IMG/VR virus record: IMGVR_UViG_3300041402_000314
Coordinates: 1 to 64,000 of that record
DNA: 64,000 nucleotides
Reading direction: 5' to 3' (one strand)
Of this stretch, positions 1 to 28,511 are shown one piece after another. The notes beneath the pieces were generated by a model. It had not been told where the DNA came from. It worked only from the letters and a program-made list of their open reading frames with translations, and ran no database searches. Numbering within the stretch: the stretch's first letter is position 1; each line of letters begins with the position of its first letter. The position numbers and the translations under genes are program-made.

Positions 1-571
1 TAAGAGGCTTGATGTTAGGGATATTATCAGACTTATCACCGATCATTATCTTGATATCAAGCTGTCTCTGAGGGTCTTCTTCCTCCACGAACTCTTTTTT
101 CATAGGGTCATATAGGGAGACACCATCATGCTTCAATAGTTGAACATAGTCCTTATCAGAAGTCACGATAACACTTTTACCATTAGCTGGTAACATTCTT
201 GAAAGAACACCAATAATATCATCGGCTTCTACCCAATTTATGCGAATGATTTTGAACGGAAAAGACTTCTTGATATCTGCCGTGAACTCATCCATATAAG
301 CATAGTATTTATCCCAAGGGAAAACGTCTTGGTCGCGCTTATCTTTCCTATGAGCCTTATAATCAGCAAAGATTTTCTTTCGCCAGTAATTCTTACCGTC
401 CACCGCTATAATTATTTCAGTCGGCCTAAATTTCTTTATATTATAGAACAGGGAATTCATTACCCTATGCTTATGTAATTTGAAATCTGGATTAGGGTCA
501 TTAATAAGACTCATATCAGCAAATAAAGTACGGATACAAAGATGGTTATAGTCTATATAGAGTCTGGACAT
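1..571 (-). CDS. rnh: T4 RNase H-like 5'-3' exonuclease (FEN1/PIN fold), truncated by the window edge
   Basis: Not in the ORF track. Manual translation from ATG at 571: MSRLYIDYNHL...AVDGKNYWRKKIFADYKAHRK...VEADDIIG...VTSDKDYVQL...IGDKSDNIP; these are the acidic motifs of T4 RNase H. Confidence 0.9.
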   Translation of the reverse strand, partial: MSRLYIDYNHLCIRTLFADMSLINDPNPDFKLHKHRVMNSLFYNIKKFRPTEIIIAVDGKNYWRKKIFADYKAHRKDKRDQDVFPWDKYYAYMDEFTADIKKSFPFKIIRINWVEADDIIGVLSRMLPANGKSVIVTSDKDYVQLLKHDGVSLYDPMKKEFVEEEDPQRQLDIKIMIGDKSDNIPNIKPL

Positions 572-1026
572 TAAGCTAGATTCTCCCTTACTATTTTACT
601 AGCAAGTTTACCATCAAACATACCATCATAATTTTCTTTGATTAGACCCATCACTTTACCCATATCTTTCATAGATGAAAATCCTGAAGTCTCTATAATG
701 TCGTTAATAATGACAGTCAGCTCATCTTCCCTGAGTTGTATAGGGAGATATACGGAAAATAGTAATTTCTCGGCCTCGCATTCGGCAATTTCTACCGTAA
801 GGCTTTCATTTCCATTTTTCTTTTCCATCACTTTAATGGTCTCATCGATGCCTTTGATAAACTTCTTCACAGTCTGAATGACCTCGGCATCAGTAGAGAT
901 TCTATTAGCATCGTTCTTACCGATCATAGATGCTTCTGAATATAGGGTAGTAAGCGCAGTGGCTTTATCGGTCTCTCTTGCCTTTCTAGCTACAAGAGAG
1001 TCTTCTTTGATTTGATCTATTAACAT
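571..1026 (-). CDS. GatB/YqeY domain protein
   Basis: Helical protein with YLPIQL..DEL and MKDMGKVMG..K motifs of YqeY. ATG at 1026 follows an AGGAG RBS; the ORF track start at 1062 lies next to the promoter -10. Confidence 0.85.
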   Translation of the reverse strand: MLIDQIKEDSLVARKARETDKATALTTLYSEASMIGKNDANRISTDAEVIQTVKKFIKGIDETIKVMEKKNGNESLTVEIAECEAEKLLFSVYLPIQLREDELTVIINDIIETSGFSSMKDMGKVMGLIKENYDGMFDGKLASKIVRENLA

Positions 1027-1065
1027 TATAATCACTCCTAAACGAATATTCACATAATCCAATAC

Positions 1066-1094
1066 ATTATACCAAAAAGGTATGATGTTGTCAA
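1066..1094 (-). promoter_or_regulatory. sigma70-type early promoter
   Basis: TTGACA-17 nt-TATAAT with TG at the extended -10 position. Confidence 0.85.
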
Positions 1095-1097
1095 GTT

Positions 1098-1310
1098 TTA
1101 CTTATTATCCAATATGGCTATCCCCAAACATAACAGTATAGCTATTACAAAGAGGAAAGCTACGCCACCAAAGAATAATACAAATGGTAGCCATAGCGGA
1201 GATAATACCCATAACCATGACCAATCTATTGTCTCAGTAACCTTTAAGATAATAAAAATTAAGGTTAAAGGGATAGTTGGTAAGGTTATTACTACTTTAT
1301 TATTTTGCAT
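1098..1310 (-). CDS. small membrane protein
   Basis: Two hydrophobic segments and an IDWSWLWVLSPLW motif seen in small phage membrane proteins. Confidence 0.7.
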   Translation of the reverse strand: MQNNKVVITLPTIPLTLIFIILKVTETIDWSWLWVLSPLWLPFVLFFGGVAFLFVIAILLCLGIAILDNK

Positions 1311-1566
1311 TTCTCTGGATTTCTACTTTAGCACCAGCTACCATGCTTTTCTTGAGACACTTACAGAGAATATGATTCCTAGATTCTACCTGTATAGCGG
1401 TATAACCTCTACCATAACACTTATTACAGTTGGCCTTTGGCTTAAACTTCTTTACGGTCTCTTCAAACTCCTTTGCTTCCAAGAAAGATGGAATAAAGCT
1501 TTCTACATCCATTAAGTCCTTAACTGCGTCCAACATACTATTCATTTTACTCGGTGCTTCTACCAT
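1300..1566 (-). CDS. hypothetical protein with CxxC zinc motif
   Basis: CNKCYGRG...CKC; overlaps neighbours in operon fashion. Confidence 0.6.
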   Translation of the reverse strand: MVEAPSKMNSMLDAVKDLMDVESFIPSFLEAKEFEETVKKFKPKANCNKCYGRGYTAIQVESRNHILCKCLKKSMVAGAKVEIQRNAK

Positions 1567-1981
1567 TTTCTTCCTCCGTTTTGTTTACATAATTGGCTAC
1601 ATCACCTAAAGTTGTACACCATTTACCGCCATTCTTTTCAATCATTTTACCAACCGCAGTGAGAGACCTGAATTGACCCGCATCAAAAAACTTAGTTCCG
1701 TTAAAGTCTGTTATAATAGGCTCGGTAAGAAAACAGAAAATAGTCTTCTCAGGTCTTTTATTCGAGTCATCCGTGACTTCTGCTATCGAATAAACTCCAG
1801 TCATTTCAGGAGTAATCACATATAGAACAAAATCACATGATTCTCTTTGTTTGATCTCTTCCGCCATACAATCTGGAGTCCAATCATCTACCACTGGATT
1901 GAAATAATCAATTGTAAGCATAGGTATTAATTTCTCTCTCCACGTACTGTTATTACATGTCCCTCCGAGGAAGACTTTCAT
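1547..1981 (-). CDS. nucleoside 2-deoxyribosyltransferase-like protein
   Basis: N-terminal KVFLGGTC..STWRE, YFNP, and SIAEV motif with catalytic-type Glu. Confidence 0.75.
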   Translation of the reverse strand: MKVFLGGTCNNSTWREKLIPMLTIDYFNPVVDDWTPDCMAEEIKQRESCDFVLYVITPEMTGVYSIAEVTDDSNKRPEKTIFCFLTEPIITDFNGTKFFDAGQFRSLTAVGKMIEKNGGKWCTTLGDVANYVNKTEEENGRSTE

Positions 1982-1992
1982 ATTTTATCTCC

Positions 1993-2709
1993 TTATATCT
2001 CCGTACAGATTACTTGAATTATTTCTCTACTAGGCATTAATATAGCCGTTAGTTTAGCACCTTCTATCTTACCACATGCGGTATCAATATTTATAGCAGC
2101 TAATTCATCAAGTCTTTTGATATGCTGGACTTCATGATCAGGAGTATGGCCTATTACTTGTATTTTATCCATAACCGCCAATTCATCTCTATTCCACATT
2201 AAATCCATGTTGCTTTTATCGGTTCCGTCATCCCATTTTCCTACCATAAATTCACCAGTAGCTCTCATTGGATGAATACCAGCATGAGAAAGAATGAAAT
2301 CATCGGTCTCTATAAAAATAGGCATCGATAATAGGTATTCCATATGGTCATCAGGTACTTGACAATTAGAACTAATAGTATAGCTCCCATACATATCAGG
2401 CACTTCAAAGGATTCACCACCGTAACTTCTTATGGTTTTATCACCACCATTCATTTCAAAGATACTTTCATCATATTCCTTTGTACCATTAAGGAAGTCG
2501 AGAAACATATCTTCATGATTTCCTCGGACGGCCTTGATATTATTATCCATACAAAGCTGTACAACTCCCTTAGAGTCTGGTCCTCGGTCTACTAGGTCTC
2601 CTACAGAGTATATTTGCTTGATGTCATCAGGAAGAGCATCTAAGAGCCTCTGGAGAGCATCTATACATCCATGTATATCACCTATCACGGCAGTCCTATT
2701 CATTATCAT
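1993..2709 (-). CDS. metallophosphoesterase, PPP/NinI-like Ser/Thr phosphatase
   Basis: GDIHG, GDLVDRG, RGNHE, HAG, GHTP and IDTAC motifs. Confidence 0.9.
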   Translation of the reverse strand: MIMNRTAVIGDIHGCIDALQRLLDALPDDIKQIYSVGDLVDRGPDSKGVVQLCMDNNIKAVRGNHEDMFLDFLNGTKEYDESIFEMNGGDKTIRSYGGESFEVPDMYGSYTISSNCQVPDDHMEYLLSMPIFIETDDFILSHAGIHPMRATGEFMVGKWDDGTDKSNMDLMWNRDELAVMDKIQVIGHTPDHEVQHIKRLDELAAINIDTACGKIEGAKLTAILMPSREIIQVICTEI

Positions 2710-2896
2710 TTCCCTTTAATTTAAAACCAATGATTTCACCAGTTCCTATCCACGTTTCCCTATATTCATATCGACCTATTTTCTTTACTAAGTCCTCATT
2801 ACCGCACTCAGGACATACTTCGTGTTCCCAAACTTTTTCAAACCAGCCACAATCACATGTTGATGTCTTTACGTATTTTCCTAAACTGCTCTTCAT
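2696..2896 (-). CDS. small zinc-ribbon protein
   Basis: CDCG...CPECG. Confidence 0.55.
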   Translation of the reverse strand: MKSSLGKYVKTSTCDCGWFEKVWEHEVCPECGNEDLVKKIGRYEYRETWIGTGEIIGFKLKGNDNE

Positions 2897-2915
2897 TCTC
2901 TATCTTCCTTATATT

Positions 2916-2989
2916 TGGAGCTGGCGATGAGATTTGAACTCACATATCAAGGGTTGCAGCCAAGCACCTAGCCATTCGGACACACCAGC
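2916..2989 (-). tRNA. tRNA-Cys(GCA)
   Basis: Cloverleaf; loop CTGCAAC; U73; encoded CCA. Confidence 0.9.
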
Positions 2990-3148
2990 TTATTTTTAAT
3001 ATACCTTCTTATAAAATCTCCAAAATATCTTATCATAGGAGATAGGGGTTTCATCACCATCCCATTCAACAAACATCATTGCTGGAAAAACCAATTCATC
3101 TTTTATGGTTGATACTTTCTTACCAGTATAAAAGAAATATTTCTTCAT

Positions 3149-3403
3149 TTATTTCTCCGTTTCGATTATCGCAAATACTAAAGCGTTTCCAAATTCTATT
3201 ATCCAAGTACCGTCTTCGGTTATGTCCGTATCTGGGATTCTTTTATTTATAGCACTCCACAAACTATATTTAGCCTGTCTGGTGTCCTCTTTTCTATATT
3301 CGTCCCATAGTCTCCATAACGTTTTTGCATCGGTATCATAAAACTTAAAAATCCTTGGTTCGAATTTTTTCTCTTCCTTCTTTCTCTTCAGAAATTCAAA
3401 CAT
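3149..3403 (-). CDS. hypothetical protein
   Basis: 84 aa ORF with GGAGAG RBS. Confidence 0.6.
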   Translation of the reverse strand: MFEFLKRKKEEKKFEPRIFKFYDTDAKTLWRLWDEYRKEDTRQAKYSLWSAINKRIPDTDITEDGTWIIEFGNALVFAIIETEK

Positions 3404-3651
3404 CTATCTCTCCATTTATATGTATAAACCAAATCCTAGAACTGCTATCATAACGCCTAGAGCTATCATAACTCCTAGAACTTTAACTACTACCATCGCT
3501 TCTTTCACTTTCTTTATCCTCGTTATTTTAAATTGTGTCGCGGTAAGTGTGTTTTCAAGACAACCTATCCGCCTCCCTCCCTAAAGGTGAACGATTTGTA
3601 TGAGATGTTTCAGGGACGATCTCAATTTTGTCATTCCAAATTATGAAGTAT

Positions 3652-3680
3652 ATTATACCAAATCAGTTATCATTTGTCAA
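3652..3680 (-). promoter_or_regulatory. sigma70-type early promoter
   Basis: TTGACA-17-TATAAT. Confidence 0.85.
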
Positions 3681-4351
3681 GTTATATTTTTCTTATTATT
3701 TCTTCTATTGTTAGCTTGTTCTTCATCCGTAGCCCATCTACAATTTGATGGTTCATAATTGCCGTCATTGTCTATCCTATCTATAGACAATCCCACTGGT
3801 CTTTCTCCCATATCTTCTAAGAAATTGATAATACCATCTTTAGATAACCATCTCTCACAAATTGTAATTCCTCTACCACCATAATCTTTATATGCTTTAG
3901 TTTTTTTATTATAGCATCTCGTTTTCATACCATGTAATGTGCGATATTCCACAGTATTTCTTTTTCCGTGAATAATCGAATGGGTATTAAGTTTTTCTTT
4001 ATGTAAACATCCACATGATTTAGTCGCTCCTGTTCTAACTTTGGTTGCTTGGGTTATTATATTACCACCACATTCACATTCGAACAACCAATCCATATGT
4101 TTATATCTACGAGGTGTTGGTTTAATCGCTGTTAATTTGTTAAACTTCTGACCCGTTATATCTCTTTTCTCTCTATCTATACACCCACATGATTTTATAT
4201 TACCTCGTTTGATAAGTTTCATGTCTTTAACAACTTCATTTCCACAATCACATTTTAATAACCAGAATGTCTTTTTATTTTCTCGGTAAGAAAAATCAAC
4301 AGCCGTTAATCTACCAAACTTTTGACTAGTATAATCTTTCCTAGGTGGCAT
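3677..4351 (-). CDS. HNH-type homing endonuclease (YGGRGI family)
   Basis: Two N-terminal (G/S)QKFxxLT..CxCG repeats, [39 protein letters not shown]. Confidence 0.85.
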
Positions 4352-4363
4352 AATTAATCCTTC

Positions 4364-5029
4364 TTATTTTTTCTTAGATCGTCTCTTATTGTTCTCTTGC
4401 TCTTTTTTGGTAGCCCACCTACAGTTGGAAGGTTCATAGTTACCATCATTATATATTCTGTCAATGGACAATCCTTCTGGTCTCTCACCCATATCTTCTA
4501 AGAAATTAACAAAACCGTCTTTACCTAACCATCTTTCACAAACTGTTATCCCTCTACCACCATAGTTTTTATATCCAGTTGCCTTTTCATTAGCACATCT
4601 CTGTTTCATACTACCCCAACTAATGTATGTTCTGGTGCGAATAGCACCATGTTTATAATTAGGATTTACACAACCACAAGTTTTCTTTTCACCTTTTCTT
4701 AATGCGTTACTTCTAGTGGTTATTTTATTCCCACAATCACATATACATTTCCAATATACCGCACCAAAATTATTTTTATGAGAAAATTCAACAGCAGTCA
4801 ATTTACCAAATTTCTGTCCAGATATGTCTAATCTTTTAGGTATACACCCACAAGATTTCGTAAATCCTCTTCGTAAAGAAGCTCCAGCAATATTTTTTTC
4901 ATTTCCACAATCACATAGGCATTTCCAGTAAGCTTTTTTATGTTTGCTGAAATGAGAAAACTTTATAATAGCCAACTTACCAAACTTTTGTCCAGTATAA
5001 TCTTTAACTCTATACGGTAGTTTGTTCAT
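4364..5029 (-). CDS. HNH-type homing endonuclease, tandem paralog
   Basis: Same architecture as 3677..4351 ([32 protein letters not shown]). Confidence 0.85.
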   Translation of the reverse strand: MNKLPYRVKDYTGQKFGKLAIIKFSHFSKHKKAYWKCLCDCGNEKNIAGASLRRGFTKSCGCIPKRLDISGQKFGKLTAVEFSHKNNFGAVYWKCICDCGNKITTRSNALRKGEKKTCGCVNPNYKHGAIRTRTYISWGSMKQRCANEKATGYKNYGGRGITVCERWLGKDGFVNFLEDMGERPEGLSIDRIYNDGNYEPSNCRWATKKEQENNKRRSKKK

Positions 5030-5035
5030 AATACT

Positions 5036-5230
5036 CTAACCTTTATAACCCAAGTGGGAGTCATATTCTTTACCTTCTTTCTTATTTTGTATTACGTATA
5101 TTTCGTGGGTACAAGACTCACAGCGATAGATAAATTTCAGGGGAGAGGTATAAATGGCTTCACCACTATACCTATATTCGGAACCACATTGACATTGGAT
5201 ATCTAACTTCTCTTCAACAGACATAAACAT
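5036..5230 (-). CDS. small zinc-ribbon protein
   Basis: CQCG...CESC. Confidence 0.5.
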   Translation of the reverse strand: MFMSVEEKLDIQCQCGSEYRYSGEAIYTSPLKFIYRCESCTHEIYVIQNKKEGKEYDSHLGYKG

Positions 5231-5245
5231 TGCTCCTAATCAAAT

Positions 5246-5320
5246 TGGTAGGTGAGGTAGGATTCGAACCTACAATCATATCCTTATGAAAGATACAAGG
5301 CTGACCACAACCACACACCC
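5246..5320 (-). tRNA. tRNA-Met/Ile2(CAT), non-initiator
   Basis: TATCT-TTCATAA-GGATA anticodon arm, TTCGAAT T-loop, CCA; atypical D-arm. Confidence 0.75.
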
Positions 5321-5425
5321 AAAAACATTTATTCATCCTACACAACGGTTGTACTTACCGTCCCTCTAGCCCATGTGACGTATATACGTTAGAGTCCACA
5401 TCCTCGGAAGAATAAAATATCAAAA

Positions 5426-5500
5426 TGGTGGTCTTACCCGGAACCGAACCGAGATTTTGCGATTATCAGTCGCGTGTTCTTCCAGTTGAACTATAAGACC
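5426..5500 (-). tRNA. tRNA-Ile(GAT)
   Basis: Loop CTGATAA; GGTCTTA/TAAGACC acceptor stem; CCA. Confidence 0.9.
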
Positions 5501-5507
5501 GTAAATT

Positions 5508-5579
5508 TGGGAGCGAGGCCAGAAATCGAATCTGGGAATTCGGGATATGAACCCAAATGGAATACCAACTCTCCTCGCG
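5508..5579 (-). tRNA. initiator-like tRNA-fMet(CAT)
   Basis: GGG/CCC in anticodon stem, C1 mismatch, loop TTCATAT, CCA; short D-loop. Confidence 0.75.
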
Positions 5580-5591
5580 ACAATTATTATT

Positions 5592-5667
5592 TGGTACGCC
5601 TACGAGGACTCGAACCTCGATTCTAGGTTTAGAAGACCTATGCCTTATCCTGTTAGACGATAGGCGC
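5592..5667 (-). tRNA. tRNA-Arg(TCT)
   Basis: TAGGT-CTTCTAA-ACCTA; CCA. Confidence 0.92.
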
Positions 5668-5677
5668 ACGATTATTT

Positions 5678-5822
5678 TGGTGTGAGTAGGGGGAATTAAA
5701 CCCATCATGCAACTACTAAGAGTGATCAAGCTCCTTTCGCCAACCTCCCTGCTTCGTCGCGAGAGCGCACATTGTATATGTCTCCCATTGTATCCACAGT
5801 GTACTACCTGTACTTTACCCAC
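5678..5822 (-). ncRNA. 145 nt tRNA-like RNA with ~70 nt insertion replacing the anticodon arm
   Basis: GTGGGTA/TACTCAC-A-CCA acceptor, GTAC-AGGTA-GTAC D-like arm, degenerate GGG-TTTAATT-CCC T-arm; no 7 nt anticodon loop found. Confidence 0.55.
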
Positions 5823-5928
5823 ACATTTATTTTAATGGGCGGTAAGTCTTGGCTCTTAACCGATGGCATATTCATACCTCCTCTTTAAAGTTGGTTGCAA
5901 ATGCACTTACCGCCCGATTTTATTTTTG

Positions 5929-6001
5929 TGCGTCTGGTGGGAGTCGAACCCACTACCGTTGGTTTTAGAAACCACGACTCTAGCCGTTGAGTTACAGACG
6001 C
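5929..6001 (-). tRNA. amber suppressor tRNA(CTA)
   Basis: Canonical spacing GCGTCTG-TA-ACTC-AACGGCTA-GAGT-C-GTGGT-TTCTAAA-ACCAA-CGGTA-GTGGG-TTCGACT-CCCAC-CAGACGC-A places CTA at positions 34-36; CCA not fully encoded. Confidence 0.85.
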
Positions 6002-22347: not shown

Positions 22348-22539
22348 TTATTTCTCTTTTGGGTGTATGAACACCGTTGTTTTTTCTGGTGGTTTTGGTT
22401 CACATCTACTACAATGTCTTACTATTTCAAAATGTTCTGGACTATGACATTCACATTTAATATCATAGTAATAATATTTTCTACTTAGTTCAGAACTCTG
22501 TCCGCAAATATCACATACCCCGACTTCTATCTCACCCAT
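22348..22539 (-). CDS. small Cys-rich protein
   Basis: CDIC...CECH...HCSRC. Confidence 0.55.
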   Translation of the reverse strand: MGEIEVGVCDICGQSSELSRKYYYYDIKCECHSPEHFEIVRHCSRCEPKPPEKTTVFIHPKEK

Positions 22540-23011
22540 TTGACGTTCCCCAGATATTATACGGATTCTTTATCAAATTCGAATTAAGATATCTCGCATC
22601 ATCCGTAACTTCTTCTGTAACCCATTTAGGTTTCGCAAAGGTCTGATCTTCAGATTCTAATTCTATCTCTGCTACTATTAGTCCTTCGTTATCACCCCTA
22701 AATACATCGATTTCCCATGTCATACCAAAAACGACATATTCTAACCTAGTCTTCTCTAAAACACATTCACATTGTCCTAAAAGTCTCTCGGCATCGGCTA
22801 TCGGAATAGATAGTTCATATTCTACTCGCGTAATAGATTTATCACTCGATTTATAGGTCAAGAAGGCATCGTTACCGCTAGTTCTAACTCTTAATACTTT
22901 AAGACCAGACTCCATGAGATATCCTTGCCTGATTTTATGTATTTTATTACATGTATCACAAGACGGTAAATTAACATGGTCTACCAAAAACTTTCTTTCA
23001 ATTTCTACCAT
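22532..23011 (-). CDS. CYTH domain protein (adenylate cyclase/triphosphatase-like)
   Basis: EIERKFLV, IRQGYL, RVR, LTYK, EKTR, WEIDVF, AEIEL, YLNSNL. Confidence 0.9.
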   Translation of the reverse strand: MVEIERKFLVDHVNLPSCDTCNKIHKIRQGYLMESGLKVLRVRTSGNDAFLTYKSSDKSITRVEYELSIPIADAERLLGQCECVLEKTRLEYVVFGMTWEIDVFRGDNEGLIVAEIELESEDQTFAKPKWVTEEVTDDARYLNSNLIKNPYNIWGTSNG

Positions 23012-23032
23012 CTCAATCCTCTTTCAATTTTT

Positions 23033-23120
23033 TGGCGGTGAGGGTGGGAGTCGAACCCACGCACCTGTTACAGCCTAACGGTTTAGCAAACCGTCCTCTT
23101 AACCACTTGAGTACCCCACC
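23033..23120 (-). tRNA. tRNA-Ser(GCT)
   Basis: ACGGT-TTGCTAA-ACCGT, long variable arm, G73, CCA. Confidence 0.93.
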
Positions 23121-23280
23121 TAAATTATAATCTATATCCACACACTCTACAAACCATTTTAATCTCGAATTCAGTTTTACCTATCTGAACTTTGACTAAT
23201 CCAATTTCTTCAGCTTTACAGTGAGGACATTTCTTACCAGCTATTATTATATTAATATTTCTCTCACTCATTTAAAAAGT

Positions 23281-23309
23281 ATTATACTACATCCTTATCT
23301 GTTTGTCAA
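23281..23309 (-). promoter_or_regulatory. sigma70-type promoter
   Basis: TTGACA-17-TATAAT. Confidence 0.8.
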
Positions 23310-24181
23310 GTCCTATATAGACAGTTTTTAATAATATATCCCAACACATCATTATCCACCAACCGTTTAGCCATCGGAATATTCTGTGTATCTATAGCAC
23401 TTCTAACCACTGTAGACGAACAATCTATTGGAGCATCGGCATCTACCAGCATATGAGGTTCTTTCAGGAACCACGAGCTACTTGTTATATTCAAATCTTC
23501 TTCAGCTCTCGGAACAACTACAAAGGGTATTCTTCTTTCCAGTTCATCCCAACCAACCCATTTATTGGTGGTCATAGCATTATCAGCTCCCATTATGAAA
23601 GAGAACTGGTAATTATCATACTCAGGGTCATCGAGGATGCGATTCACGCAGTTTAAAGTCTCTCCCTTGAGCATGTGCCTTATTTCATAATCAAAAGCCT
23701 TTATACGTCCATCTACGGCTACAGCCATCTCTACCATTTTCAATCTTTGTTCTGGAGAAGTCATTTCCTTTCCGAACAGATGTTGGTAGCAAGGCATCAA
23801 CCAGACTTCATCAAATTTACCTGTAGCATCCAGAACCAATTGAGCTGTTTCTATATGACCTTTAGTAACAGGGTCAAAAGCTCCACCCAATATGGCTACC
23901 TTAGTCTTACGGCCTAATGATTTATATTGCTGTTCTCTTCTCTTTATCTTCTCATGAGCCATAGCTATGACATTAGATGCGTCCTCGCCCATTTCAGAGA
24001 TACCAGCTAGAACAGAACAAAGCAGATCGCCATATTCTTCTTTGAGATGATTTATATCAAGAAATCTACCGACCTCTTCTGCTTCTCTCTGGATATCCTT
24101 AACTCTTTCCGTTAATGGAGTCCTACCGAACATCTTTTGGAAGAGTTCATAATTCCTGTCTTGAAGGTCTTTTATACTCAT
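23306..24181 (-). CDS. nadD: MazG-like domain fused to NadD/NMNAT nucleotidyltransferase
   Basis: N-terminal REAEEV...EEYGDLL (MazG-like); C-terminal AILGGAFDPVTKGH (HxGH), FIMGAD, CSSTVVR. Probable ATG at 24181; the ORF track extends to 24283. Confidence 0.85.
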   Translation of the reverse strand: MSIKDLQDRNYELFQKMFGRTPLTERVKDIQREAEEVGRFLDINHLKEEYGDLLCSVLAGISEMGEDASNVIAMAHEKIKRREQQYKSLGRKTKVAILGGAFDPVTKGHIETAQLVLDATGKFDEVWLMPCYQHLFGKEMTSPEQRLKMVEMAVAVDGRIKAFDYEIRHMLKGETLNCVNRILDDPEYDNYQFSFIMGADNAMTTNKWVGWDELERRIPFVVVPRAEEDLNITSSSWFLKEPHMLVDADAPIDCSSTVVRSAIDTQNIPMAKRLVDNDVLGYIIKNCLYRT

Positions 24182-24355
24182 AGTTAATCCACAAATATCT
24201 CTAAAGGTTTTATCAGATAAATCCCTAATCATAGGCATTAATATTTTAGGAATTTCTTCATCCACAGTTAATCCCACTACCAACTATCATCATTATTAAT
24301 CCAGCGATAATGATGATAGTACCAAATATCAATTCAAACAGTCTCCATTTGTCCA

Positions 24356-24580
24356 TTATTTTATCACCCAAGCGTCAACAACACCCTTTATACGACCTGT
24401 TTGAAGTGCTTCAGAATACCCCCTTAACATACCTTCTTCGATGGTTCTCACTAATCTATCACCACATTTATCGAAGACGGTTTGGGCGAATGTTTCCTTA
24501 TCCTCTTCGGATGCCCAATCAGGACAAATATTATCCAAAAATTCTAAGATCGTTTTCTTATATTTGATATCAGTTTCCAT
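24356..24580 (-). CDS. hypothetical protein
   Basis: GAGGAG RBS. Confidence 0.55.
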   Translation of the reverse strand: METDIKYKKTILEFLDNICPDWASEEDKETFAQTVFDKCGDRLVRTIEEGMLRGYSEALQTGRIKGVVDAWVIK

Positions 24581-24645
24581 AAACGTTTCTCCTCAATTTT
24601 CAAACCATTATATTGTATATCAAATCAAAAGTCAAGTATTAATTT

Positions 24646-24720
24646 TGGAGCGGATATCGGAATTCGAATCCGACCTTTAAACTTGGCAAGCTTACGTGCT
24701 ACCACTAACACTATATCCGC
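24646..24720 (-). tRNA. tRNA-Gly(GCC)
   Basis: TAAGC-TTGCCAA-GTTTA; U73; CCA. Confidence 0.9.
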
Positions 24721-24726
24721 AAATTT

Positions 24727-24805
24727 TGGAGCGGATGGGGCGAGTCGAACGCCTTATTTACAGTTTGGAAAACTGCTTACCAATACCCTTGGCTTAACCA
24801 CCCGC
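24727..24805 (-). tRNA. tRNA-Gly(TCC) with enlarged D region
   Basis: GCAGT-TTTCCAA-ACTGT; GCGGGTG/CATCCGC-T-CCA; D region refolded as GCCAA-GGGTA-TTGGT. Confidence 0.8.
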
Positions 24806-24997
24806 ATTATCTAAACATTCTTTACATTTAAAAATTTCTGTACCATCATACATTTCAGTTTTAGAGTCGATTTTCCATAACCCCATACCAAACAATATAC
24901 AACTACTATCTTGCAAAAACCTACATATAACATATGCTCCTTCGGCATTCAAACTTCTACAAAGCTTACCATCTGGAACTTGAACTTGAACTAACAT
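24794..24997 (-). CDS. small Cys-rich protein, paralog-like to 8579..8782
   Basis: VQVPDGKLC...CRFL..CILF...KCKECL; stop codon lies inside tRNA-Gly(TCC). Confidence 0.5.
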   Translation of the reverse strand: MLVQVQVPDGKLCRSLNAEGAYVICRFLQDSSCILFGMGLWKIDSKTEMYDGTEIFKCKECLDNAGG

Positions 24998-25018
24998 TTT
25001 ATTCGCCTTTTTATTTTT

Positions 25019-25114
25019 TGGAGGAGAGGAGGAGATTTGAACTCCCATCGGAACCCGAAGACCCCGAATACGCTTTTCAAGAGCGTTCGACTATTCCCCA
25101 CTGTCAACCTCTCC
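25019..25114 (-). tRNA. tRNA-Ser(TGA)
   Basis: ACGCT-CTTGAAA-AGCGT, long TTCG-capped variable arm, U73 discriminator (G is usual for Ser), CCA. Confidence 0.85.
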
Positions 25115-25121
25115 AAATATT

Positions 25122-25322
25122 TTATAATCTAATACGTGACCCATCATTCCAAACCCATTCAAATACGGTATCGGAATCCCTGAATTTAATGAGATAACCA
25201 CTTCTCCAGTCAAGGCCACCTGTTTCTATTTTATGTTTCACCCACTCATCAATTTGCTTTCTTGTGGACAAATCGGTTCCTGTTTCTTCTGTATTATTTT
25301 TAATCAGTTTATAACGTGCCAT
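25122..25322 (-). CDS. hypothetical protein
   Basis: GAGGAAGG RBS. Confidence 0.5.
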   Translation of the reverse strand: MARYKLIKNNTEETGTDLSTRKQIDEWVKHKIETGGLDWRSGYLIKFRDSDTVFEWVWNDGSRIRL

Positions 25323-25323
25323 T

Positions 25324-25554
25324 TCAAACCTTCCTCAATTTCCATGCTAACCAATGGATAAATCCTTTAGAATATTTATAGTCATAAAATACAATAGCAG
25401 GTCTCATATTTTCAACATGTTTAATAAAATCTTTAGACATGTAAGGTGCTTTCAAAATTACCTTCGGTGATGATATATAAGGTAATATTTCTTCTATCTC
25501 TAAAAAATCTATTTGATGGATTCTAGCTATATTTTCAATATCTTCTTTAGTCAT
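25324..25554 (-). CDS. hypothetical protein
   Basis: 76 aa in operon. Confidence 0.5.
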   Translation of the reverse strand: MTKEDIENIARIHQIDFLEIEEILPYISSPKVILKAPYMSKDFIKHVENMRPAIVFYDYKYSKGFIHWLAWKLRKV

Positions 25555-25786
25555 TATTACCTTTGTATGTAAAATGATACCAATACCTAATACTCAAAAC
25601 AACCCAAAGGACAATCCATATTACATTAATAACTGGCACTGCTAATATTCCGCTCATATACCATATTATAGGGTTTTTATAATTATAACCGAATTTATGA
25701 TCAGGACCGCGAAATATATCTTCGCCAATGCAATACAAATAAAAACAAATAGCCAATCCTAAACCAACATACAAATAATATAACAT
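25547..25786 (-). CDS. membrane protein
   Basis: Two hydrophobic helices; GAGGA RBS. Confidence 0.6.
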   Translation of the reverse strand: MLYYLYVGLGLAICFYLYCIGEDIFRGPDHKFGYNYKNPIIWYMSGILAVPVINVIWIVLWVVLSIRYWYHFTYKGNND

Positions 25787-25802
25787 ATTATCCTCAATTT
25801 TT

Positions 25803-25890
25803 TGGCGGAGCGTGAGGAATTCGAATCCTCGTAGCTGTTACGCTAACCATCGCTTTCCAAGCGAGTACCTTACCACTCAGTCAACACTCC
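25803..25890 (-). tRNA. tRNA-Ser(GGA)
   Basis: Loop TTGGAAA, long variable arm, G73, CCA. Confidence 0.92.
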
Positions 25891-26180
25891 TAGAATTTTT
25901 TCATAACTTCTTTTATATCTTTACCATAACATTCTCTATTCAACTGACAAGTTTTTATATTGGCGGTTATATCGAAATCTTTAACTTTATCTAATTTCAA
26001 ATTCATTAATGTATTAGTAATGAATGATTCTGTTCGGTCTTGTATTTCCAGATCATCCTCATCATATTTATAATCAATACCAGCTTCAGTCAATGCCTGT
26101 TCTATTATAAAAGCAACAGTTGATTTACCAGCACCAGCGGTTCCGCCTATTTTTATTATCACATCGCTATTCATAATCAA
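25890..26180 (-). CDS. short P-loop-containing hypothetical protein
   Basis: IKIGGTAGAGKST Walker A-like motif in a 96 aa ORF. Confidence 0.55.
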   Translation of the reverse strand: MIMNSDVIIKIGGTAGAGKSTVAFIIEQALTEAGIDYKYDEDDLEIQDRTESFITNTLMNLKLDKVKDFDITANIKTCQLNRECYGKDIKEVMKKF

Positions 26181-26199
26181 ACTCCTTATTCAATTTTAA

Positions 26200-26285
26200 T
26201 GGTGGGTATGGAATGATTCGAACATTCTCAGCCTAAGACAGTGGATTTACAGTCCACTTCAGCTCTCCAACTCTGACGCATACCC
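26200..26285 (-). tRNA. tRNA-Tyr(GTA)
   Basis: GTGGA-CTGTAAA-TCCAC, variable arm, A73, CCA. Confidence 0.92.
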
Positions 26286-26299
26286 ATTTATTTAATTTT

Positions 26300-26385
26300 T
26301 GGTGGTCGTAGTAAGAATCGAACTTACACAGTACAAAGACGAGAGGTTTACAATCTCCGAGGCTCACCACCTGCCCAATACGACC
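26300..26385 (-). tRNA. second tRNA-Tyr(GTA)
   Basis: Loop TTGTAAA, variable arm, GGTCGTA/TACGACC-A-CCA; mismatch at pair 31:39. Confidence 0.82.
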
Positions 26386-26511
26386 TTATTTTTAATGCTG
26401 GAGTTAAGTTGTATCCAGCTACCCACATAGCTAAATTATGAAGTGCTACATCAGGAACCGTTGCGCGTCCTTGTTAGGCAATCAAGCTTCCTTCATAATC
26501 GCGGTATTTTT

Positions 26512-26659
26512 AATATGTATTCATGGTGAGTGGCACTAAGCCCTTACAATCTAGTTCATTAATCGTCATTAATGCTATTATTTTATCGGTTTGGCTGTCT
26601 ACTTTAACCGCTAGATCAAGCATTTACAGCTACCTTATGCCTCCCCATCAATACATATT
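26512..26659 (-). ncRNA. candidate rod-shaped ncRNA
   Basis: Nested stems AATATGTATT/AATACATATT, ATGG/CCAT, GGCA/TGCC, TAAG/CTTA, ATCTAG/CTAGAT, CGGTT/AACCG, CATTAAT/ATTAATG. Confidence 0.5.
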
Positions 26660-26666
26660 TAATTTT

Positions 26667-26742
26667 TGGAGCCTCCAGAGACAATCGAAATCTCATCTAT
26701 GGGTTACAAATCCATTGTTCTTGCCACTTGAACTATAGAGGC
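26667..26742 (-). tRNA. tRNA-Thr(TGT)
   Basis: Loop TTTGTAA; GCCTCTA/TGGAGGC-T-CCA. Confidence 0.9.
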
Positions 26743-26751
26743 ATATTTTTC

Positions 26752-26941
26752 TTATTTTATCCTATCTCTCAATTCTAACAACTCAAAATGAGTCTTGCGA
26801 AGTGTTTCTCTAAACTTCTGATTATACTCTTCAGAACCCCCAACATTCTTCAACCACGATCTCTGATAAATTTTTAATCGCAGACTGAAGGTGTGCTTTA
26901 ACGTCATCCAATCTTTCATCCGCTGTTGTAGTAACACTCAT
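26752..26941 (-). pseudogene. frameshifted small protein gene
   Basis: GGGAG RBS + ATG at 26941: MSVTTTADERLDDVKAHLQSAIKNLSEIVVEECWG, then a stop; removing one G from the G5 run (26837-26841) continues as SEEYNQKFRETLRKTHFELLELRDRIK. Confidence 0.6.
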
Positions 26942-26959
26942 CTCAAACTCCCTTTAATT

Positions 26960-27400
26960 ATTGGTCATAGTGATACGGACTATGACCGATCTCTATTTTT
27001 CACTACCGCACTAGCTACACTACACTTAGTAGTAGTCACCCCTTATAGTCAGTGTTATCAGCTTCTATGGCTTATTGCGTCTCTATGAGAAGACCTACCT
27101 CCACTTTTACCCTTGTTAGGGTGATAACCTTTCTATATCGTACAGGGATTATTCCGTCACGTTAATTAGAGTACGCATCTAATATCGTCTATTCCTACCT
27201 ACTCTTTTTTCAATAGGAACGGAAAGATTAATGGTGTTCAGGTCGCTCTATTGTCTCCTAGTCAGGTATTAAAAAAGAACCACTTCCTTTCAGAGAATCG
27301 AACTCCAACATCGTTTTGCCTAGAATTTATTGATGTCTCCTACCCATTACAAGAAACCATTCTACTTAGATACGATAGCCCTCAATGCACCATTAAAATT
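26960..27400 (-). ncRNA. candidate large structured ncRNA (~440 nt)
   Basis: No credible ORF; consensus promoter at 27416-27444; several long-range stems and a TTCGATT T-loop hairpin. Confidence 0.55.
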
Positions 27401-27415
27401 ATTCATTATTAAACC

Positions 27416-27444
27416 ATTATAACAAATTCCTTTTCATTTGTCAA
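27416..27444 (-). promoter_or_regulatory. sigma70-type promoter upstream of the large ncRNA candidate
   Basis: TTGACA-17-TATAAT. Confidence 0.85.
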
Positions 27445-27452
27445 GAACTATT

Positions 27453-28511
27453 TTACATTTGTTCTTGTTGGAAGAAATAATCTCTTACTACCTTAGAGAC
27501 TTTGTTGTTTACTTCCTTGACATCCAGACCAGCATCGGTAATGATGTCGAGGTCTTCCTTTACGATATCACCAATAACCCATCTGATGAAATCTCCCATT
27601 CCTTTACGATCTATCTCTCCGCCATTCAGAGTATCGAATGTTTCCTGTATGCCTTGCTCCATACGGAAAGCAGGAGTAATCTTATTTACCACTTCATTAA
27701 CAAGATTCATTTTAGCTTCGTCTACTTTAGGCAGCTTCTTTACTTTACTGGTAGAATGCTTTTCTCCCTTGACCTTAAAGCGAAAGTCATTGCCGTTAAA
27801 AACGCCTTTCCAGACCACACCCTCACCAACACCTTCATTTCCTAATTGGAAGGCCACAGGGCATCTTTCCTCGACTTCCAAAGTGATTTCATTCAACTTA
27901 TTCTGAAAAGCCTCTGGTTTATTGAAATCTATTTTTATTTCGAAGGTAGGAAATTCATCTATAAAGTAAATGTTATGATCATTAATTTTACTACCTCTAT
28001 TATTCGGACATACTTTACTTAAGTCTAACCAGAATCCATCTTCTTCATCATCATGAGACGTTATCTTAACATCGAAGATAACGAACATCTTATCAAGCCC
28101 ATTGACCCCAACACCTTTCTGAATAGACCCACCGCTGACTTCCCCGAAAATAGAAATGATGTTATTAATAGTATCGATATTAAAATCCTTAATTATTTCA
28201 GCTACGATATTATTGAATGAAACTTTTCTCGCATGTACGAAACAAGAAAACCCACAATTATCTTTTTCTGGGGTGATGATATTTTTCCTAGATTGCGTCC
28301 AAATACCACTTTCAGCATTAAAGCATACTGCACCATTACTTCCATGAATTTTAGTGGTTCCTGTTAATTTCAGAACTGGTTTCGGTCTCATCCCATCATA
28401 TACGGGTTCACCATCTTCTCCTATTCCTACAAAACTAGCAGAATGGCTTATATGTTTAACAATATTTCTATACTGTTCTATACTTGGGTACTTAATAAAC
28501 TTCTTTTCCAT
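27453..28511 (-). CDS. ATP-dependent RNA ligase (Rnl2-like)
   Basis: KYPSI, TKIHGSN (motif I KxxG), IFGEV, VIFDV, GEGVVW, FKVKGEKH. Confidence 0.88.
   Translation of the reverse strand: MEKKFIKYPSIEQYRNIVKHISHSASFVGIGEDGEPVYDGMRPKPVLKLTGTTKIHGSNGAVCFNAESGIWTQSRKNIITPEKDNCGFSCFVHARKVSFNNIVAEIIKDFNIDTINNIISIFGEVSGGSIQKGVGVNGLDKMFVIFDVKITSHDDEEDGFWLDLSKVCPNNRGSKINDHNIYFIDEFPTFEIKIDFNKPEAFQNKLNEITLEVEERCPVAFQLGNEGVGEGVVWKGVFNGNDFRFKVKGEKHSTSKVKKLPKVDEAKMNLVNEVVNKITPAFRMEQGIQETFDTLNGGEIDRKGMGDFIRWVIGDIVKEDLDIITDAGLDVKEVNNKVSKVVRDYFFQQEQM

What the first reader, a model, noticed from the sequence alone, without database searches (positions are those of the whole stretch)
571..28511. Integrated translation-maintenance island
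Seen: tRNAs for all 20 amino acids (4 with CAU), tRNA mimics, an Rnl2-like ligase, a Pth2-like hydrolase, YqeY, a phosphatase and attenuator-like leaders, all co-oriented over ~28 kb. Established: phage tRNAs and ligase-based repair counter host tRNA destruction (T4 Pnk/Rnl versus PrrC). Inference: a sense-replace-repair-decoy system in which leaders sense charging, the array replaces tRNAs, ligase and Pth repair or recycle them, and mimics absorb nucleases. No polynucleotide kinase was recognised in the window.
Basis: inference. Interest (0 to 1): 0.7.

Follow-up and report, generated by a model that had tools for sequence, protein, structure and literature searches.

The report
Phage tRNA array with RNA-repair genes
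This is the early accessory-gene region of an uncultured T4-like marine-sediment phage, holding 33 tRNA genes mixed with RNA-repair, ribosome-rescue, NAD-synthesis and selfish endonuclease genes: a known kind of phage toolkit rather than a newly integrated sensing, repair and decoy machine.

Summary
Window 2.9-26.7 kb carries 33 co-oriented tRNA genes covering all 20 amino acids, four of them with CAU, plus an amber suppressor. The same region has an Rnl2 ligase, a 97-aa Pth2-fold protein, YqeY and a lambda/Pnkp-type phosphoesterase.

- The region is not a unit. It holds at least 15 strong sigma70-type early promoters, six homing-type endonuclease genes and an NAD module (NadD, NadE, a kinase, CYTH).
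- I found no leader or attenuator.
- The missing kinase has an explanation outside the finding. The genome also encodes RtcB at 65.3 kb, a CCA-adding enzyme at 69.3 kb and RlaP at 201.4 kb.
- Close relatives keep the synteny but differ in repair genes.
- Distant Rnl2 phages link Rnl2 to Pnk, Rnl1 and tRNA arrays, never to YqeY or NadD/NadE, and almost never to the phosphoesterase (1 of 80 loci) or the mini-Pth2 (2 of 80).

Supplying tRNAs together with RNA repair, Pth2 rescue and NAD synthesis is already described for large phages (PMC7824862).

Two leads are new to me. The mini-Pth2 gene sits beside a suppressor tRNA in 11 of 19 loci from about 7 phage lineages. A tRNA-like RNA without an anticodon loop is conserved in three related phages.

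The parts
2919..26742 (-). Array of 33 tRNA genes, interspersed with small ORFs. In window order: Cys 2919; CAU 5246; Ile-GAU 5426; initiator-like CAU 5508; Arg-UCU 5592; amber suppressor CUA 5928; CAU 7187; Phe 8289; Arg-ACG 8430; Asp 9834; Gln-CUG 10344; Ala 10429; His 12338; Gln-UUG 12894; Leu-UAG 13258; Leu-UAA 13668; Pro 14042; Asn 14402 (long variable arm); Trp 15303; Lys-CUU 17516; Lys-UUU 17609; CAU 17693 (long variable arm); Glu-CUC 18262; Glu-UUC 18353; Glu-UUC 19400; Val 20406; Ser-GCU 23033; Gly-GCC 24646; Ser-UGA 25019; Ser-GGA 25803; Tyr 26200; Tyr 26300; Thr 26667.
   Evidence: ARAGORN; Rfam RF00005; hand reading of the five Rfam-only genes; gene order conserved in relatives.
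27453..28511 (-). Rnl2-family ATP-dependent RNA ligase, 352 aa.
   Evidence: PF09414. A 15-sequence profile hits T4 Rnl2 (2hvq) at E 1.6e-5 across residues 53-335. The KxHGTN, EGxV and KxK motifs are invariant. 151 phage records hold homologues, several annotated RnlB.
6009..6302 (-). Mini-Pth2, a 97-aa protein with the peptidyl-tRNA hydrolase 2 fold.
   Evidence: PF01981 at 23.8 bits. A family of about 288 proteins of about 97 aa. Profile hit to 2zv3 at E 1e-5. AlphaFold pLDDT 92.9, and the top Foldseek hits are all Pth2/Bit1 at TM 0.75-0.83. The 'GK' loop of canonical Pth2 is deleted.
6274..6579 (-). Gene X, 101 aa, unknown function. It overlaps the start of the mini-Pth2 gene and carries a conserved ARHHHIAYCLLRGR motif.
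   Evidence: The same overlapping pair occurs in relA, relB, L098 and L099. No Pfam or PHROG hit.
5928..6001 (-). Amber-suppressor tRNA (anticodon CUA), 7 nt downstream of the mini-Pth2 gene.
   Evidence: ARAGORN, and Rfam at 59.8 bits. The same placement is seen in relB and L098.
571..1062 (-). YqeY-family protein, 163 aa.
   Evidence: PF09424 at E 3.9e-23. Homologues occur in 207 records of mostly large phages, often annotated 'tRNA amidotransferase'.
1993..2709 (-). Calcineurin-like metallophosphoesterase of the lambda-phosphatase / ApaH / Pnkp-phosphatase clade.
   Evidence: PF00149. The GDIHG, GDLVDRG, GNHE and GHTP motifs are present, and the full-length PDB match is 4j6o, identified through PMC3675462. 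The relA copy has TGA in place of R62.
20483..24283 (-). NAD module: NadE NAD synthase (20483-21394), a CYTH protein (22532-23011) and a MazG-NadD fusion (23306-24283). tRNA-Ser lies between them.
   Evidence: Pfam and NCBIfam. Conserved in relA, relB and L012.
10503..11043 (-). AAA_28 P-loop nucleoside/nucleotide kinase, probably a nicotinamide or nicotinate riboside kinase and not a polynucleotide kinase.
   Evidence: PF13521. One source names a homologue nicotinamide riboside kinase. The AlphaFold model matches thymidylate kinases and the NadR kinase domain, with no Pnk among the top 50.
3677..5029 (-). Two paralogous HNH homing-endonuclease genes (3677-4351 and 4364-5029).
   Evidence: phrog_374 at E 1e-80; direct repeat D5.
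7738..8253 (-). HNH endonuclease.
   Evidence: PF14279 and PF01844.
18413..19312 (-). DUF559 / Vsr-like endonuclease.
   Evidence: PF04480.
14858..14936 (-). Conserved tRNA-like RNA. It has acceptor, D and T arms and an encoded CCA, but a 4-bp stem with a tetraloop stands in place of the anticodon arm.
   Evidence: Not called by ARAGORN or Rfam. It is 83-86% identical in relA and relB, with compensatory changes in the acceptor and T stems. An R1 covariance model scores about 100 bits only in these three phages.
14598..14685 (-). Second tRNA-like element, with an 8-bp acceptor stem, a canonical T arm and an aberrant long central arm.
1066..29744 (-). Fifteen strong sigma70-type early promoters (TTGACA-17/18-TATAAT, at least 11 of 12 matches, mostly with an extended TG). 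Their -35 hexamers start at 1094, 3680, 6137, 9956, 10328, 10607, 13851, 15955, 16224, 19962, 20389, 23309, 24635, 27444 and 29744.
   Evidence: (repeat families D6, D10, D14, D18). The genome has 49 such sites, all co-directional with the local genes.
15962..16002 (-). The one strong intrinsic terminator in the span (17-bp stem plus a T run). It lies between a 48-aa gene and the next promoter.

Best explanation
The span is the tRNA-rich, early-transcribed accessory region of a distant T4-like phage from marine sediment. Many host-type sigma70 promoters transcribe it as many small units soon after infection.

It supplies a nearly complete phage-encoded tRNA set. That set keeps phage translation going when host tRNAs are unsuitable, depleted or cut. 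Around and between the tRNA genes lie independently acquired helper genes of three kinds:
(a) RNA and translation upkeep: Rnl2, which seals 3'-OH/5'-P nicks; a Pth2-fold hydrolase; YqeY; and possibly the phosphoesterase.
(b) NAD+ synthesis: a riboside kinase, NadD and NadE.
(c) Selfish homing endonucleases.

The phage's RNA repair is genome-wide, not an island. RtcB (65.3 kb, plus strand) can join 2',3'-cyclic-P/5'-OH ends directly, which explains the lack of Pnk and Rnl1. A CCA-adding enzyme (69.3 kb) and RlaP (201.4 kb) complete the kit.

Shown here: the gene identities, folds, promoters, synteny and distribution. Inferred: every activity, and the counter-defence role.
For: Phage type. The DNA polymerase is 35% identical to T4-like cyanomyovirus polymerases, and the neighbours are T4-like replication genes.

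tRNA set.

Promoters. 15 of the genome's 49 near-perfect sigma70 promoters lie in 1-30 kb, all pointing the same way as the genes. T4-like phages are known to place early promoters before novel ORFs and tRNA genes (PMC1524935).

Protein identities. Rnl2, Pth2 fold, YqeY, phosphoesterase, NadD/NadE and the kinase. RtcB (257 bits), CCA-adding enzyme with HD domain, and RlaP.

Missing genes. No Pnk, Rnl1 or 2H phosphoesterase was found. None of 12 long Rnl2 records has RtcB; 7 of the 12 loci behind them carry Rnl1 within 10 kb of Rnl2 and 5 also Pnk.

Synteny. The layout is shared with relA and relB.

Distant phages. In 23 de-duplicated full-length distant Rnl2 loci, 17 have Rnl1, 14 have Pnk and 11 have at least 3 tRNAs. 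Rnl2 lies inside the tRNA-bearing span in 7 of 8 records that have at least 22 tRNAs.

Literature. The published synthesis covers tRNA provisioning, RtcB/Rnl1/Rnl2, phosphoesterases, RlaP, CCA-adding enzymes, PTH2 and NAD synthesis in jumbo phages (PMC7824862).
Against: - No expression or activity data exist. Only DNA metagenomes hold the sequence.
- The host is unknown, so codon-usage compensation cannot be separated from counter-defence.
- The mini-Pth2 lacks the loop lysine of canonical Pth2, so it may not hydrolyse peptidyl-tRNA.
- The phosphoesterase would destroy RtcB's substrate ends, and it is broken in relA. Its role in repair is therefore doubtful.
- The record is 89% complete and cut at the window start, so a Pnk or Rnl1 could in principle lie in missing sequence. 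Synteny with relA suggests that only about 0.5 kb is missing.
Confidence: 0.65

Rival explanations
1. One reading: one integrated sense-replace-repair-decoy island. Leaders sense tRNA charging, the array replaces tRNAs, the ligase, phosphatase and Pth2 repair and recycle them, and tRNA mimics absorb nucleases.
For: - All the named protein genes and the tRNAs are really there and co-oriented.
- The whole layout is conserved in relA and relB.
- tRNA-like RNAs without anticodon loops exist, and one is conserved with compensatory changes.
- YqeY lies within 9 kb of a mini-Pth2 in phiAS5, XacN1 and LR756504 too.
- Rnl2 adjoins tRNA arrays in many distant phages.
Against: - No T-box or leader RNA at E<=1, and no excess of terminators.
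- Fifteen independent promoters.
- NAD genes and six endonuclease genes sit among the parts.
- RtcB, the CCA-adding enzyme and RlaP lie elsewhere in the genome.
- relA's phosphoesterase has a stop codon.
- Rnl1, AAA_33 and a second PTH2 vary among close relatives.
- In 80 distant Rnl2 loci, 0 have YqeY, 0 have NadD/NadE, 1 has the phosphoesterase and 2 have a mini-Pth2.
- An RNA with no anticodon loop cannot act as a decoy for anticodon nucleases.
Confidence: 0.07
2. Codon-supply reading: the tRNA array exists mainly to match the codon usage of a 35% GC phage to a host with a different tRNA pool or to a broad host range. The neighbouring protein genes are unrelated accessory cargo that collects in a tolerant early region.
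For: - U34 anticodons that read A- or G-ending codons dominate the set.
- The classic view for T4 is that phage tRNAs match differences in codon bias, although other T4-like phages show much less correlation (PMC1524935).
- Homing endonucleases and many small unknown ORFs show that the region tolerates insertions.
- Gene content varies among close relatives.
Against: - A set covering all 20 amino acids plus an initiator-like tRNA goes beyond filling in rare codons.
- RNA ligases recur beside tRNA arrays across distant phages.
- The Pth2-like gene is a core part of tRNA arrays in unrelated mycobacteriophages (PMC5966550).
- The host is unknown, so the reading could not be tested.
Confidence: 0.25

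Closest known systems
tRNA-provisioning and RNA-repair toolkit of large and jumbo phages (Iyer, Anantharaman, Krishnan, Burroughs and Aravind 2021, PMC7824862, sections 3.4.8-3.4.9)
   Same: The same parts list: many tRNAs, Rnl2 and RtcB ligases, a calcineurin-like phosphoesterase, RlaP, a CCA-adding enzyme, PTH2 for ribosome rescue, and phage NAD+ synthesis. The proposed purpose is also the same, namely countering host attacks on tRNA and on NAD+.
   Different: - This is a 204-kb T4-like phage from marine sediment with no close cultured relative.
- It combines RtcB and Rnl2 and lacks Pnk and Rnl1.
- Its Pth2 is a 97-aa minimal form.
- Its NAD route uses NadD and NadE rather than Nampt and Nmnat.
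T4 Pnk + Rnl1 repair of PrrC-cut tRNA-Lys (Amitsur, Levitz and Kaufmann 1987, as cited in PMC10264068)
   Same: A phage-encoded RNA ligase in a T4-like early region, with a plausible role in re-joining cut tRNA.
   Different: Pnk and Rnl1, the two enzymes that define the T4 pathway, are absent. Only Rnl2 is present, and its natural T4 role is itself unknown. Direct sealing by RtcB is the likelier route here.
tRNA regions of T4-like phages such as Aeh1, KVP40 and phiAS5 (PMC1524935)
   Same: - Up to 24 or more tRNAs, including CAU tRNAs read as Ile and tRNA pseudogenes.
- Early sigma70-like promoters in front of tRNAs and novel ORFs.
- GatB/YqeY-domain and poly(A)-polymerase-family genes in Aeh1.
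- phiAS5 has RNA ligase, YqeY, a Pth2-like hydrolase and Pnk within 20 kb on one strand.
   Different: There are more tRNAs (33 plus tRNA-like elements), they are spread over 24 kb with genes between them, and phiAS5 has no tRNAs in the corresponding stretch.
tRNA array units of cluster C mycobacteriophages (PMC5966550)
   Same: A Pth2-like gene is a core member of the tRNA array. Here I also found an amber-suppressor tRNA next to it in Cane17 and Myrna.
   Different: The phage lineage and host phylum are unrelated, and no RNA ligase or NAD genes were reported in those arrays.

Membership tests
Rnl2 (T4 RNA ligase 2) family | Nucleotidyltransferase motifs I (KxxG lysine), IV (EGxx) and V (KxK). 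| tested here: met
   K54-x-H56-G57, E230-G231 and K246-x-K248 are invariant in 15 homologues and align to the T4 Rnl2 motifs.
Rnl2 (T4 RNA ligase 2) family | Rnl2-type C-terminal domain after the nucleotidyltransferase domain. | tested here: met
   The profile alignment to 2hvq runs from query 53-335 to chain 36-327, which includes the C-terminal domain.
Rnl2 (T4 RNA ligase 2) family | ATP-dependent sealing of 3'-OH/5'-P nicks in duplex RNA. | not testable with these tools
   Needs an enzyme assay.
Pth2 (PF01981) peptidyl-tRNA hydrolase | The Pth2 alpha/beta fold. | tested here: met
   The top 13 Foldseek hits are all Pth2/Bit1, at TM 0.74-0.83 and E down to 1.5e-7.
Pth2 (PF01981) peptidyl-tRNA hydrolase | Conserved RxDL, GHA and acidic 'DAG'-region residues. 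| tested here: met
   R9, D11, H23, E72 and D74 are invariant and align with these motifs of 2zv3.
Pth2 (PF01981) peptidyl-tRNA hydrolase | Lysine of the 'GK' loop, which I recall from memory of the Sulfolobus Pth2 work as catalytic. | tested here: not met
   The loop is two residues shorter and no lysine is conserved there. The protein is therefore filed as Pth2-fold, with its activity unproven.
T4-type heal-and-seal tRNA repair (Pnk + Rnl1) | A polynucleotide 5'-kinase/3'-phosphatase gene. | tested here: not met
   PF13671 gives only sub-threshold hits, tblastn with a phage Pnk finds nothing, and the AAA_28 fold is a small-molecule kinase.
T4-type heal-and-seal tRNA repair (Pnk + Rnl1) | An Rnl1 ligase gene. 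| tested here: not met
   PF09511 gives no match, and tblastn with two Rnl1 proteins finds nothing.
RtcB direct RNA ligation | A full-length RtcB domain. | tested here: met
   PF01139 scores 257 bits on a 391-aa ORF at genome 65,324-66,499, outside the finding.
T-box or attenuation leaders (charging sensors) | A match to a known leader RNA family, or a short ORF with codon runs followed by alternative hairpins upstream of a regulated gene. | tested here: not met
   No Rfam leader at E<=1. Terminator counts are as in shuffled sequence. The single candidate is a plain gene with its terminator and the next promoter.
Pnkp-type 2',3'-phosphatase (calcineurin-like) | Metallophosphoesterase motifs and full-length similarity to the Pnkp phosphatase module. 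| tested here: met
   The motifs are present and 4j6o aligns over 8-234 at E 2.4e-11.
Pnkp-type 2',3'-phosphatase (calcineurin-like) | Action on RNA 2',3'-cyclic phosphate ends rather than on proteins or Ap4A. | not testable with these tools
   Lambda phosphatase and ApaH score equally well over the N-terminal third.
YqeY (PF09424) | A full-length domain match above the curated cut-off. | tested here: met
   82.6 bits against a cut-off of 27, covering profile positions 2-143 of 143.

The most novel reading that the evidence does not exclude
The 97-aa mini-Pth2 is a dedicated partner of phage suppressor tRNAs. In this clade it comes with its overlapping partner gene X.

A suppressor tRNA gene (CUA, or UUA in Lak phages) lies within 3.1 kb of the mini-Pth2 gene in 11 of 19 loci. 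These come from about 7 unrelated lineages: this T4-like clade, L099, Lak megaphages, two huge phages, Acinetobacter phage ME3, and cluster C mycobacteriophages. In 8 of the 11 the distance is under 1 kb, and in four of the 10-kb loci (Lak-A1, Lak-B4, LR756501, ME3) no other kind of tRNA was called by ARAGORN. In contrast, none of 173 tRNAs in 1.2 Mb of comparable phage DNA is a suppressor.

The module might let a phage run stop-codon read-through while clearing the resulting stalled or dropped-off peptidyl-tRNAs. Alternatively it might edit the charging of the suppressor.

Separately, the conserved tRNA-like RNA without an anticodon loop could be a working RNA, for example a cofactor or a sponge for enzymes that act on tRNA ends.
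Probability: 0.4. Interest if true: 0.65.

Novelty: new member of a known kind. Interest (0 to 1): 0.35.

Why it matters
For the finding itself, it adds one more example from a little-known marine-sediment branch of T4-like phages. The example shows a large phage carrying its own tRNA set plus RNA-repair, ribosome-rescue and NAD-synthesis genes. It also illustrates that RtcB can stand in for the classic Pnk and Rnl1 pair.

The side observation may matter more. If the minimal Pth2 really works with suppressor tRNAs, it gives a testable handle on two open questions: how phages tolerate or exploit stop-codon read-through, and why peptidyl-tRNA hydrolase genes sit inside phage tRNA arrays.

Tried and rejected
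- Close relatives. Megablast of 19 kb against INPHARED found none. Single-protein scans of IMG/VR with Rnl2 and with the DNA polymerase found nothing useful.
- Whole ENA contigs of relA and relB could not be searched. I walked along them with exact-protein look-ups instead.
- PDB search with the Rnl2 sequence alone found nothing. A family profile was needed.
- Alternative genetic code. TAG ends 32 of 275 ORFs of at least 100 aa, and reading TAG through gives no excess of fused ORFs. I found no sign of recoding, so table 11 was kept.
- AAA_28 protein as the missing polynucleotide kinase: rejected. Its fold and family are those of nucleoside/nucleotide kinases.
- Gene X as a Pth2 paralogue: rejected, hhalign probability 1.7%.
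- Complex prediction of mini-Pth2 with gene X returned 'no answer'. This is evidence neither for nor against binding.
- RNA runs. None was listed, and only DNA metagenomes from marine sediment and cold seep hold the sequence.
- My tRNA count for five phage records used too strict an E-value and returned only candidate counts of 34, 30, 67, 31 and 5.
- The R1 covariance model found the tRNA-like element only in the three close phages.

Full report
WHAT THE WINDOW IS
The window is the first 64 kb of a 204,149-bp IMG/VR virus record (CheckV 89% complete, about 35% GC). Its DNA polymerase is about 35% identical to those of T4-like cyanomyoviruses. The neighbouring genes are T4-like replication and recombination genes: helicase, UvsX-like recombinase, SbcCD-like nuclease and ribonucleotide reductase. 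Only DNA metagenomes from marine sediment and cold seep hold the sequence.

GC skew and the ORF map show a single minus-strand block from about 39 kb down to base 1. The record is cut inside an RNase H/FEN gene at its start. The genes at the far end of the record (RlaP at 201,404-202,294 and its neighbours) match what follows RNase H in a relative. The block therefore continues there, and only about 0.5 kb seems to be missing.

CHECKING THE OBSERVATION
tRNA genes. ARAGORN finds 28, all on the minus strand. Rfam adds five above its gathering score. I read these as Cys-GCA, Lys-UUU, Glu-CUC, Glu-UUC and Val-UAC. ARAGORN calls their counterparts in relatives as Lys, Glu and Val. The 33 genes cover all 20 amino acids.

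Four tRNAs have CAU. One of them (5508-5579) looks like an initiator, with a mismatch at pair 1-72 and three G-C pairs in the anticodon stem. Another (17693-17779) has a long variable arm, as does tRNA-Asn. There is also an amber suppressor (CUA) at 5928-6001.

Proteins.
- Rnl2 is confirmed by Pfam and by a family profile that hits T4 Rnl2 over nearly its full length, with the catalytic motifs invariant.
- The Pth2-like call is marginal by Pfam at 23.8 bits. A confident model (pLDDT 92.9) nevertheless matches Pth2 and Bit1 structures at TM about 0.8.
- YqeY is clear.
- The phosphatase belongs to the lambda-phosphatase / ApaH / Pnkp clade. Its only full-length match among solved structures is the 2',3'-phosphatase module of bacterial Pnkp.

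Leaders and mimics.
- No leader or attenuator could be found.
- Three tRNA-like elements that both tRNA programs miss do exist. One of them, at 14858-14936, is conserved in two relatives with compensatory changes. It has a 4-bp stem and a tetraloop where the anticodon arm should be.

WHAT ELSE IS IN THE SPAN
- Six homing-type endonuclease genes: 3677-4351, 4364-5029, 7738-8253, 9965-10300, 18413-19312, and 28580-29365 on the plus strand.
- An NAD module: NadE, a MazG-NadD fusion, a CYTH protein and an AAA_28 kinase whose fold is that of small-molecule nucleoside/nucleotide kinases.
- A nucleoside deoxyribosyltransferase-like gene, and about 45 small unknown ORFs.
- Fifteen near-perfect sigma70-type promoters, mostly with an extended -10. 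They point along the genes inside 1-30 kb. The genome has 49 such sites, every one co-directional with the local genes. Only one strong terminator is present.

The span is therefore many early transcription units, as described for T4-like phages (PMC1524935), and not one operon.

REPAIR GENES OUTSIDE THE SPAN
The genome encodes RtcB at 65,324-66,499 (plus strand, 257 bits). It also has a CCA-adding enzyme with an HD domain at 69,332-70,651 (plus strand) and RlaP at 201,404-202,294 (minus strand). It has no Pnk, Rnl1 or 2H phosphoesterase.

From established enzymology, RtcB joins 2',3'-cyclic-P/3'-P ends to 5'-OH ends directly. Rnl2 could serve nicks with 3'-OH/5'-P ends left by metal-dependent nucleases; this is inference. 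The phosphoesterase would remove the very ends that RtcB uses, so its place in repair is uncertain.

RELATIVES
Two ENA metagenome phages, relA (204,679 bp, Rnl2 78% identical) and relB (163,614 bp, 74%), share the whole layout. The order runs from Rnl2 through the tRNAs, NadD, CYTH, NadE, the DUF559 endonuclease, AAA_28, HNH, gene X, mini-Pth2, the phosphoesterase and YqeY to RNase H.

They differ in the repair parts:
- relA's phosphoesterase has TGA where this phage has R62 of the RGNHE motif.
- relB adds a T4-type Rnl1, a 135-aa AAA_33 kinase, a second ligase-like gene, NT5C and an NMN-transporter fragment.
- relA adds a 149-aa PTH2 past RNase H.

More distant Rnl2 phages show a different pattern. 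Among 23 de-duplicated full-length IMG/VR loci (Rnl2 42-54% identical):
- 17 carry Rnl1, 14 carry a 312-aa Pnk and 11 carry at least 3 tRNAs, all within 10 kb of Rnl2.
- All 11 tRNA-rich loci also have Pnk and Rnl1.
- None has YqeY, a mini-Pth2, the phosphoesterase, NadD or NadE.

In 12 long records, Rnl2 lies inside the tRNA-bearing span in 7 of the 8 that have at least 22 tRNAs, and in 0 of the 4 that have 10 or fewer. None of the 12 has RtcB.

The link between RNA ligases and tRNA arrays is therefore real and recurrent. The other parts are patchy with respect to Rnl2. YqeY does lie within 9 kb of a Pth2-like gene in phiAS5, XacN1 (also near NadE) and LR756504, which points to a loose neighbourhood of translation genes.

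COMPARISON WITH WHAT IS KNOWN
Iyer et al. 2021 (PMC7824862) already describe the following in jumbo phages:
- tRNA provisioning.
- RtcB, Rnl1 and Rnl2 ligases.
- Kinases and phosphoesterases, calcineurin-like in a few cases.
- RlaP and CCA-adding enzymes.
- PTH2 for rescue of jammed ribosomes.
- Phage NAD+ synthesis.
They read all of these as answers to host attacks on tRNA and NAD+.

The 'replace' idea is argued in PMC10264068. Pth2-like genes inside the tRNA arrays of mycobacteriophages are reported in PMC5966550.

A LEAD FOUND ON THE WAY
The mini-Pth2 belongs to a well-conserved family of about 97-aa proteins, with 288 hits. In this clade an overlapping gene X of about 100 aa always precedes it.

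A suppressor tRNA follows or precedes it closely:

| Phage or locus | Distance to suppressor tRNA |
|---|---|
| This phage | 7 nt |
| relB | 3 nt |
| L098 | 1 nt |
| Myrna | 0.13 kb |
| Cane17 | 0.25 kb |
| ME3 | 0.45 kb |
| Lak-B4 (UUA) | 0.6 kb |
| Lak-A1 (UUA) | 0.7 kb |
| LR756500 | 0.8 kb |
| LR756501 (two copies) | 2.1 kb |
| L099 | 3.1 kb |

relA has the homologous tRNA with an aberrant anticodon loop. Seven loci have no suppressor nearby: RAS14, XacN1, LR756511, LR756504, phiAS5, L032 and L050.

As a control, none of 173 tRNAs in 1.21 Mb of Rnl2 loci is a suppressor. The main stop-codon-recoding preprint does not mention peptidyl-tRNA hydrolase. This link looks non-random and, as far as I could search, undescribed. 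Its meaning is inference only.

VERDICT
The span is an ordinary, if rich, T4-like early accessory region rather than a new integrated system.

Noticed in passing
window 5928-6579 (minus); also L011:11604-12274, L098:7436-8071, L099:9739-13472, L104, L105, L106, L107, L110, L100, L101: There is a conserved cassette of gene X, mini-Pth2 and a suppressor tRNA. A suppressor tRNA (CUA, or UUA in Lak phages) lies within 3.1 kb of the mini-Pth2 gene in 11 of 19 loci from about 7 phage lineages. By contrast, 0 of 173 tRNAs in 1.2 Mb of control phage loci are suppressors.
   Followed up: partly
window 14858-14936 (minus); L008:3673-3751; L011:7602-7678: A conserved tRNA-like RNA has acceptor, D and T arms and an encoded CCA, but only a 4-bp stem with a tetraloop in place of the anticodon arm. 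Three phages show 2 compensatory pairs. A second aberrant tRNA-like element lies at 14598-14685 and a remnant at 5676-5750.
   Followed up: partly
genome 65,324-66,499 (+), 69,332-70,651 (+), 201,404-202,294 (-), i.e. L096:1324-2499, L096:5332-6651, L097:9405-10295: RtcB, a CCA-adding enzyme with an HD domain, and RlaP lie outside the window. The phage has no Pnk or Rnl1. Twelve Rnl2 phages, of which 7 carry Rnl1 and 5 also Pnk next to Rnl2, have no RtcB, which suggests that the two repair routes substitute for one another.
   Followed up: partly
window 14402-14486 and 17693-17779 (minus): tRNA-Asn(GUU) and one CAU tRNA have long variable arms (85 and 87 nt), which is unusual for these identities. 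relA's tRNA-Asn is a normal 73 nt.
   Followed up: no
window 10503-11043, 20483-21394, 22532-23011, 23306-24283 (minus): An NAD+ module sits among the tRNA genes: an AAA_28 riboside-type kinase, NadE, a CYTH protein and a MazG-NadD fusion. relB adds NT5C and an NMN-transporter fragment. In XacN1, NadE, YqeY and a Pth2-like domain lie within 4 kb.
   Followed up: partly
L008:19133-19843 (relA): The phosphoesterase gene of the closest relative has an in-frame TGA exactly at the arginine of the RGNHE motif (R62 in this phage). It is either a recent pseudogene or a variant within that population.
   Followed up: yes
genome 88,664-88,783 (+): A tRNA-like hit (Rfam 44 bits) that ARAGORN reads as tRNA-Leu(AAG) with a 23-nt intron lies far from the array, on the other strand.
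   Followed up: no
genome 198,575-198,657 and 198,804-198,883 (minus), i.e. L097:6576-6658 and 6805-6884; L010:18526-18608: The R1 model gives weaker hits (32-44 bits) to further tRNA-like sequences at the far end of the record. These lie next to a 669-aa gene, and relA has one at the same place. ARAGORN and Rfam call none of them.
   Followed up: no
window 1-30000 (minus) and the whole genome: The genome has 49 near-perfect TTGACA-17/18-TATAAT promoters, mostly with an extended TG, and all are co-directional with the local genes. This implies that the host sigma70 holoenzyme drives a very large early programme.
   Followed up: partly
L102:4515-5300 (RAS14) and L103:4461-5300 (XacN1): In the jumbo phages of Xanthomonadaceae hosts, the Pth2-like domain is the C-terminal part of a 261-279-aa protein, and no suppressor tRNA lies nearby.
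   Followed up: no
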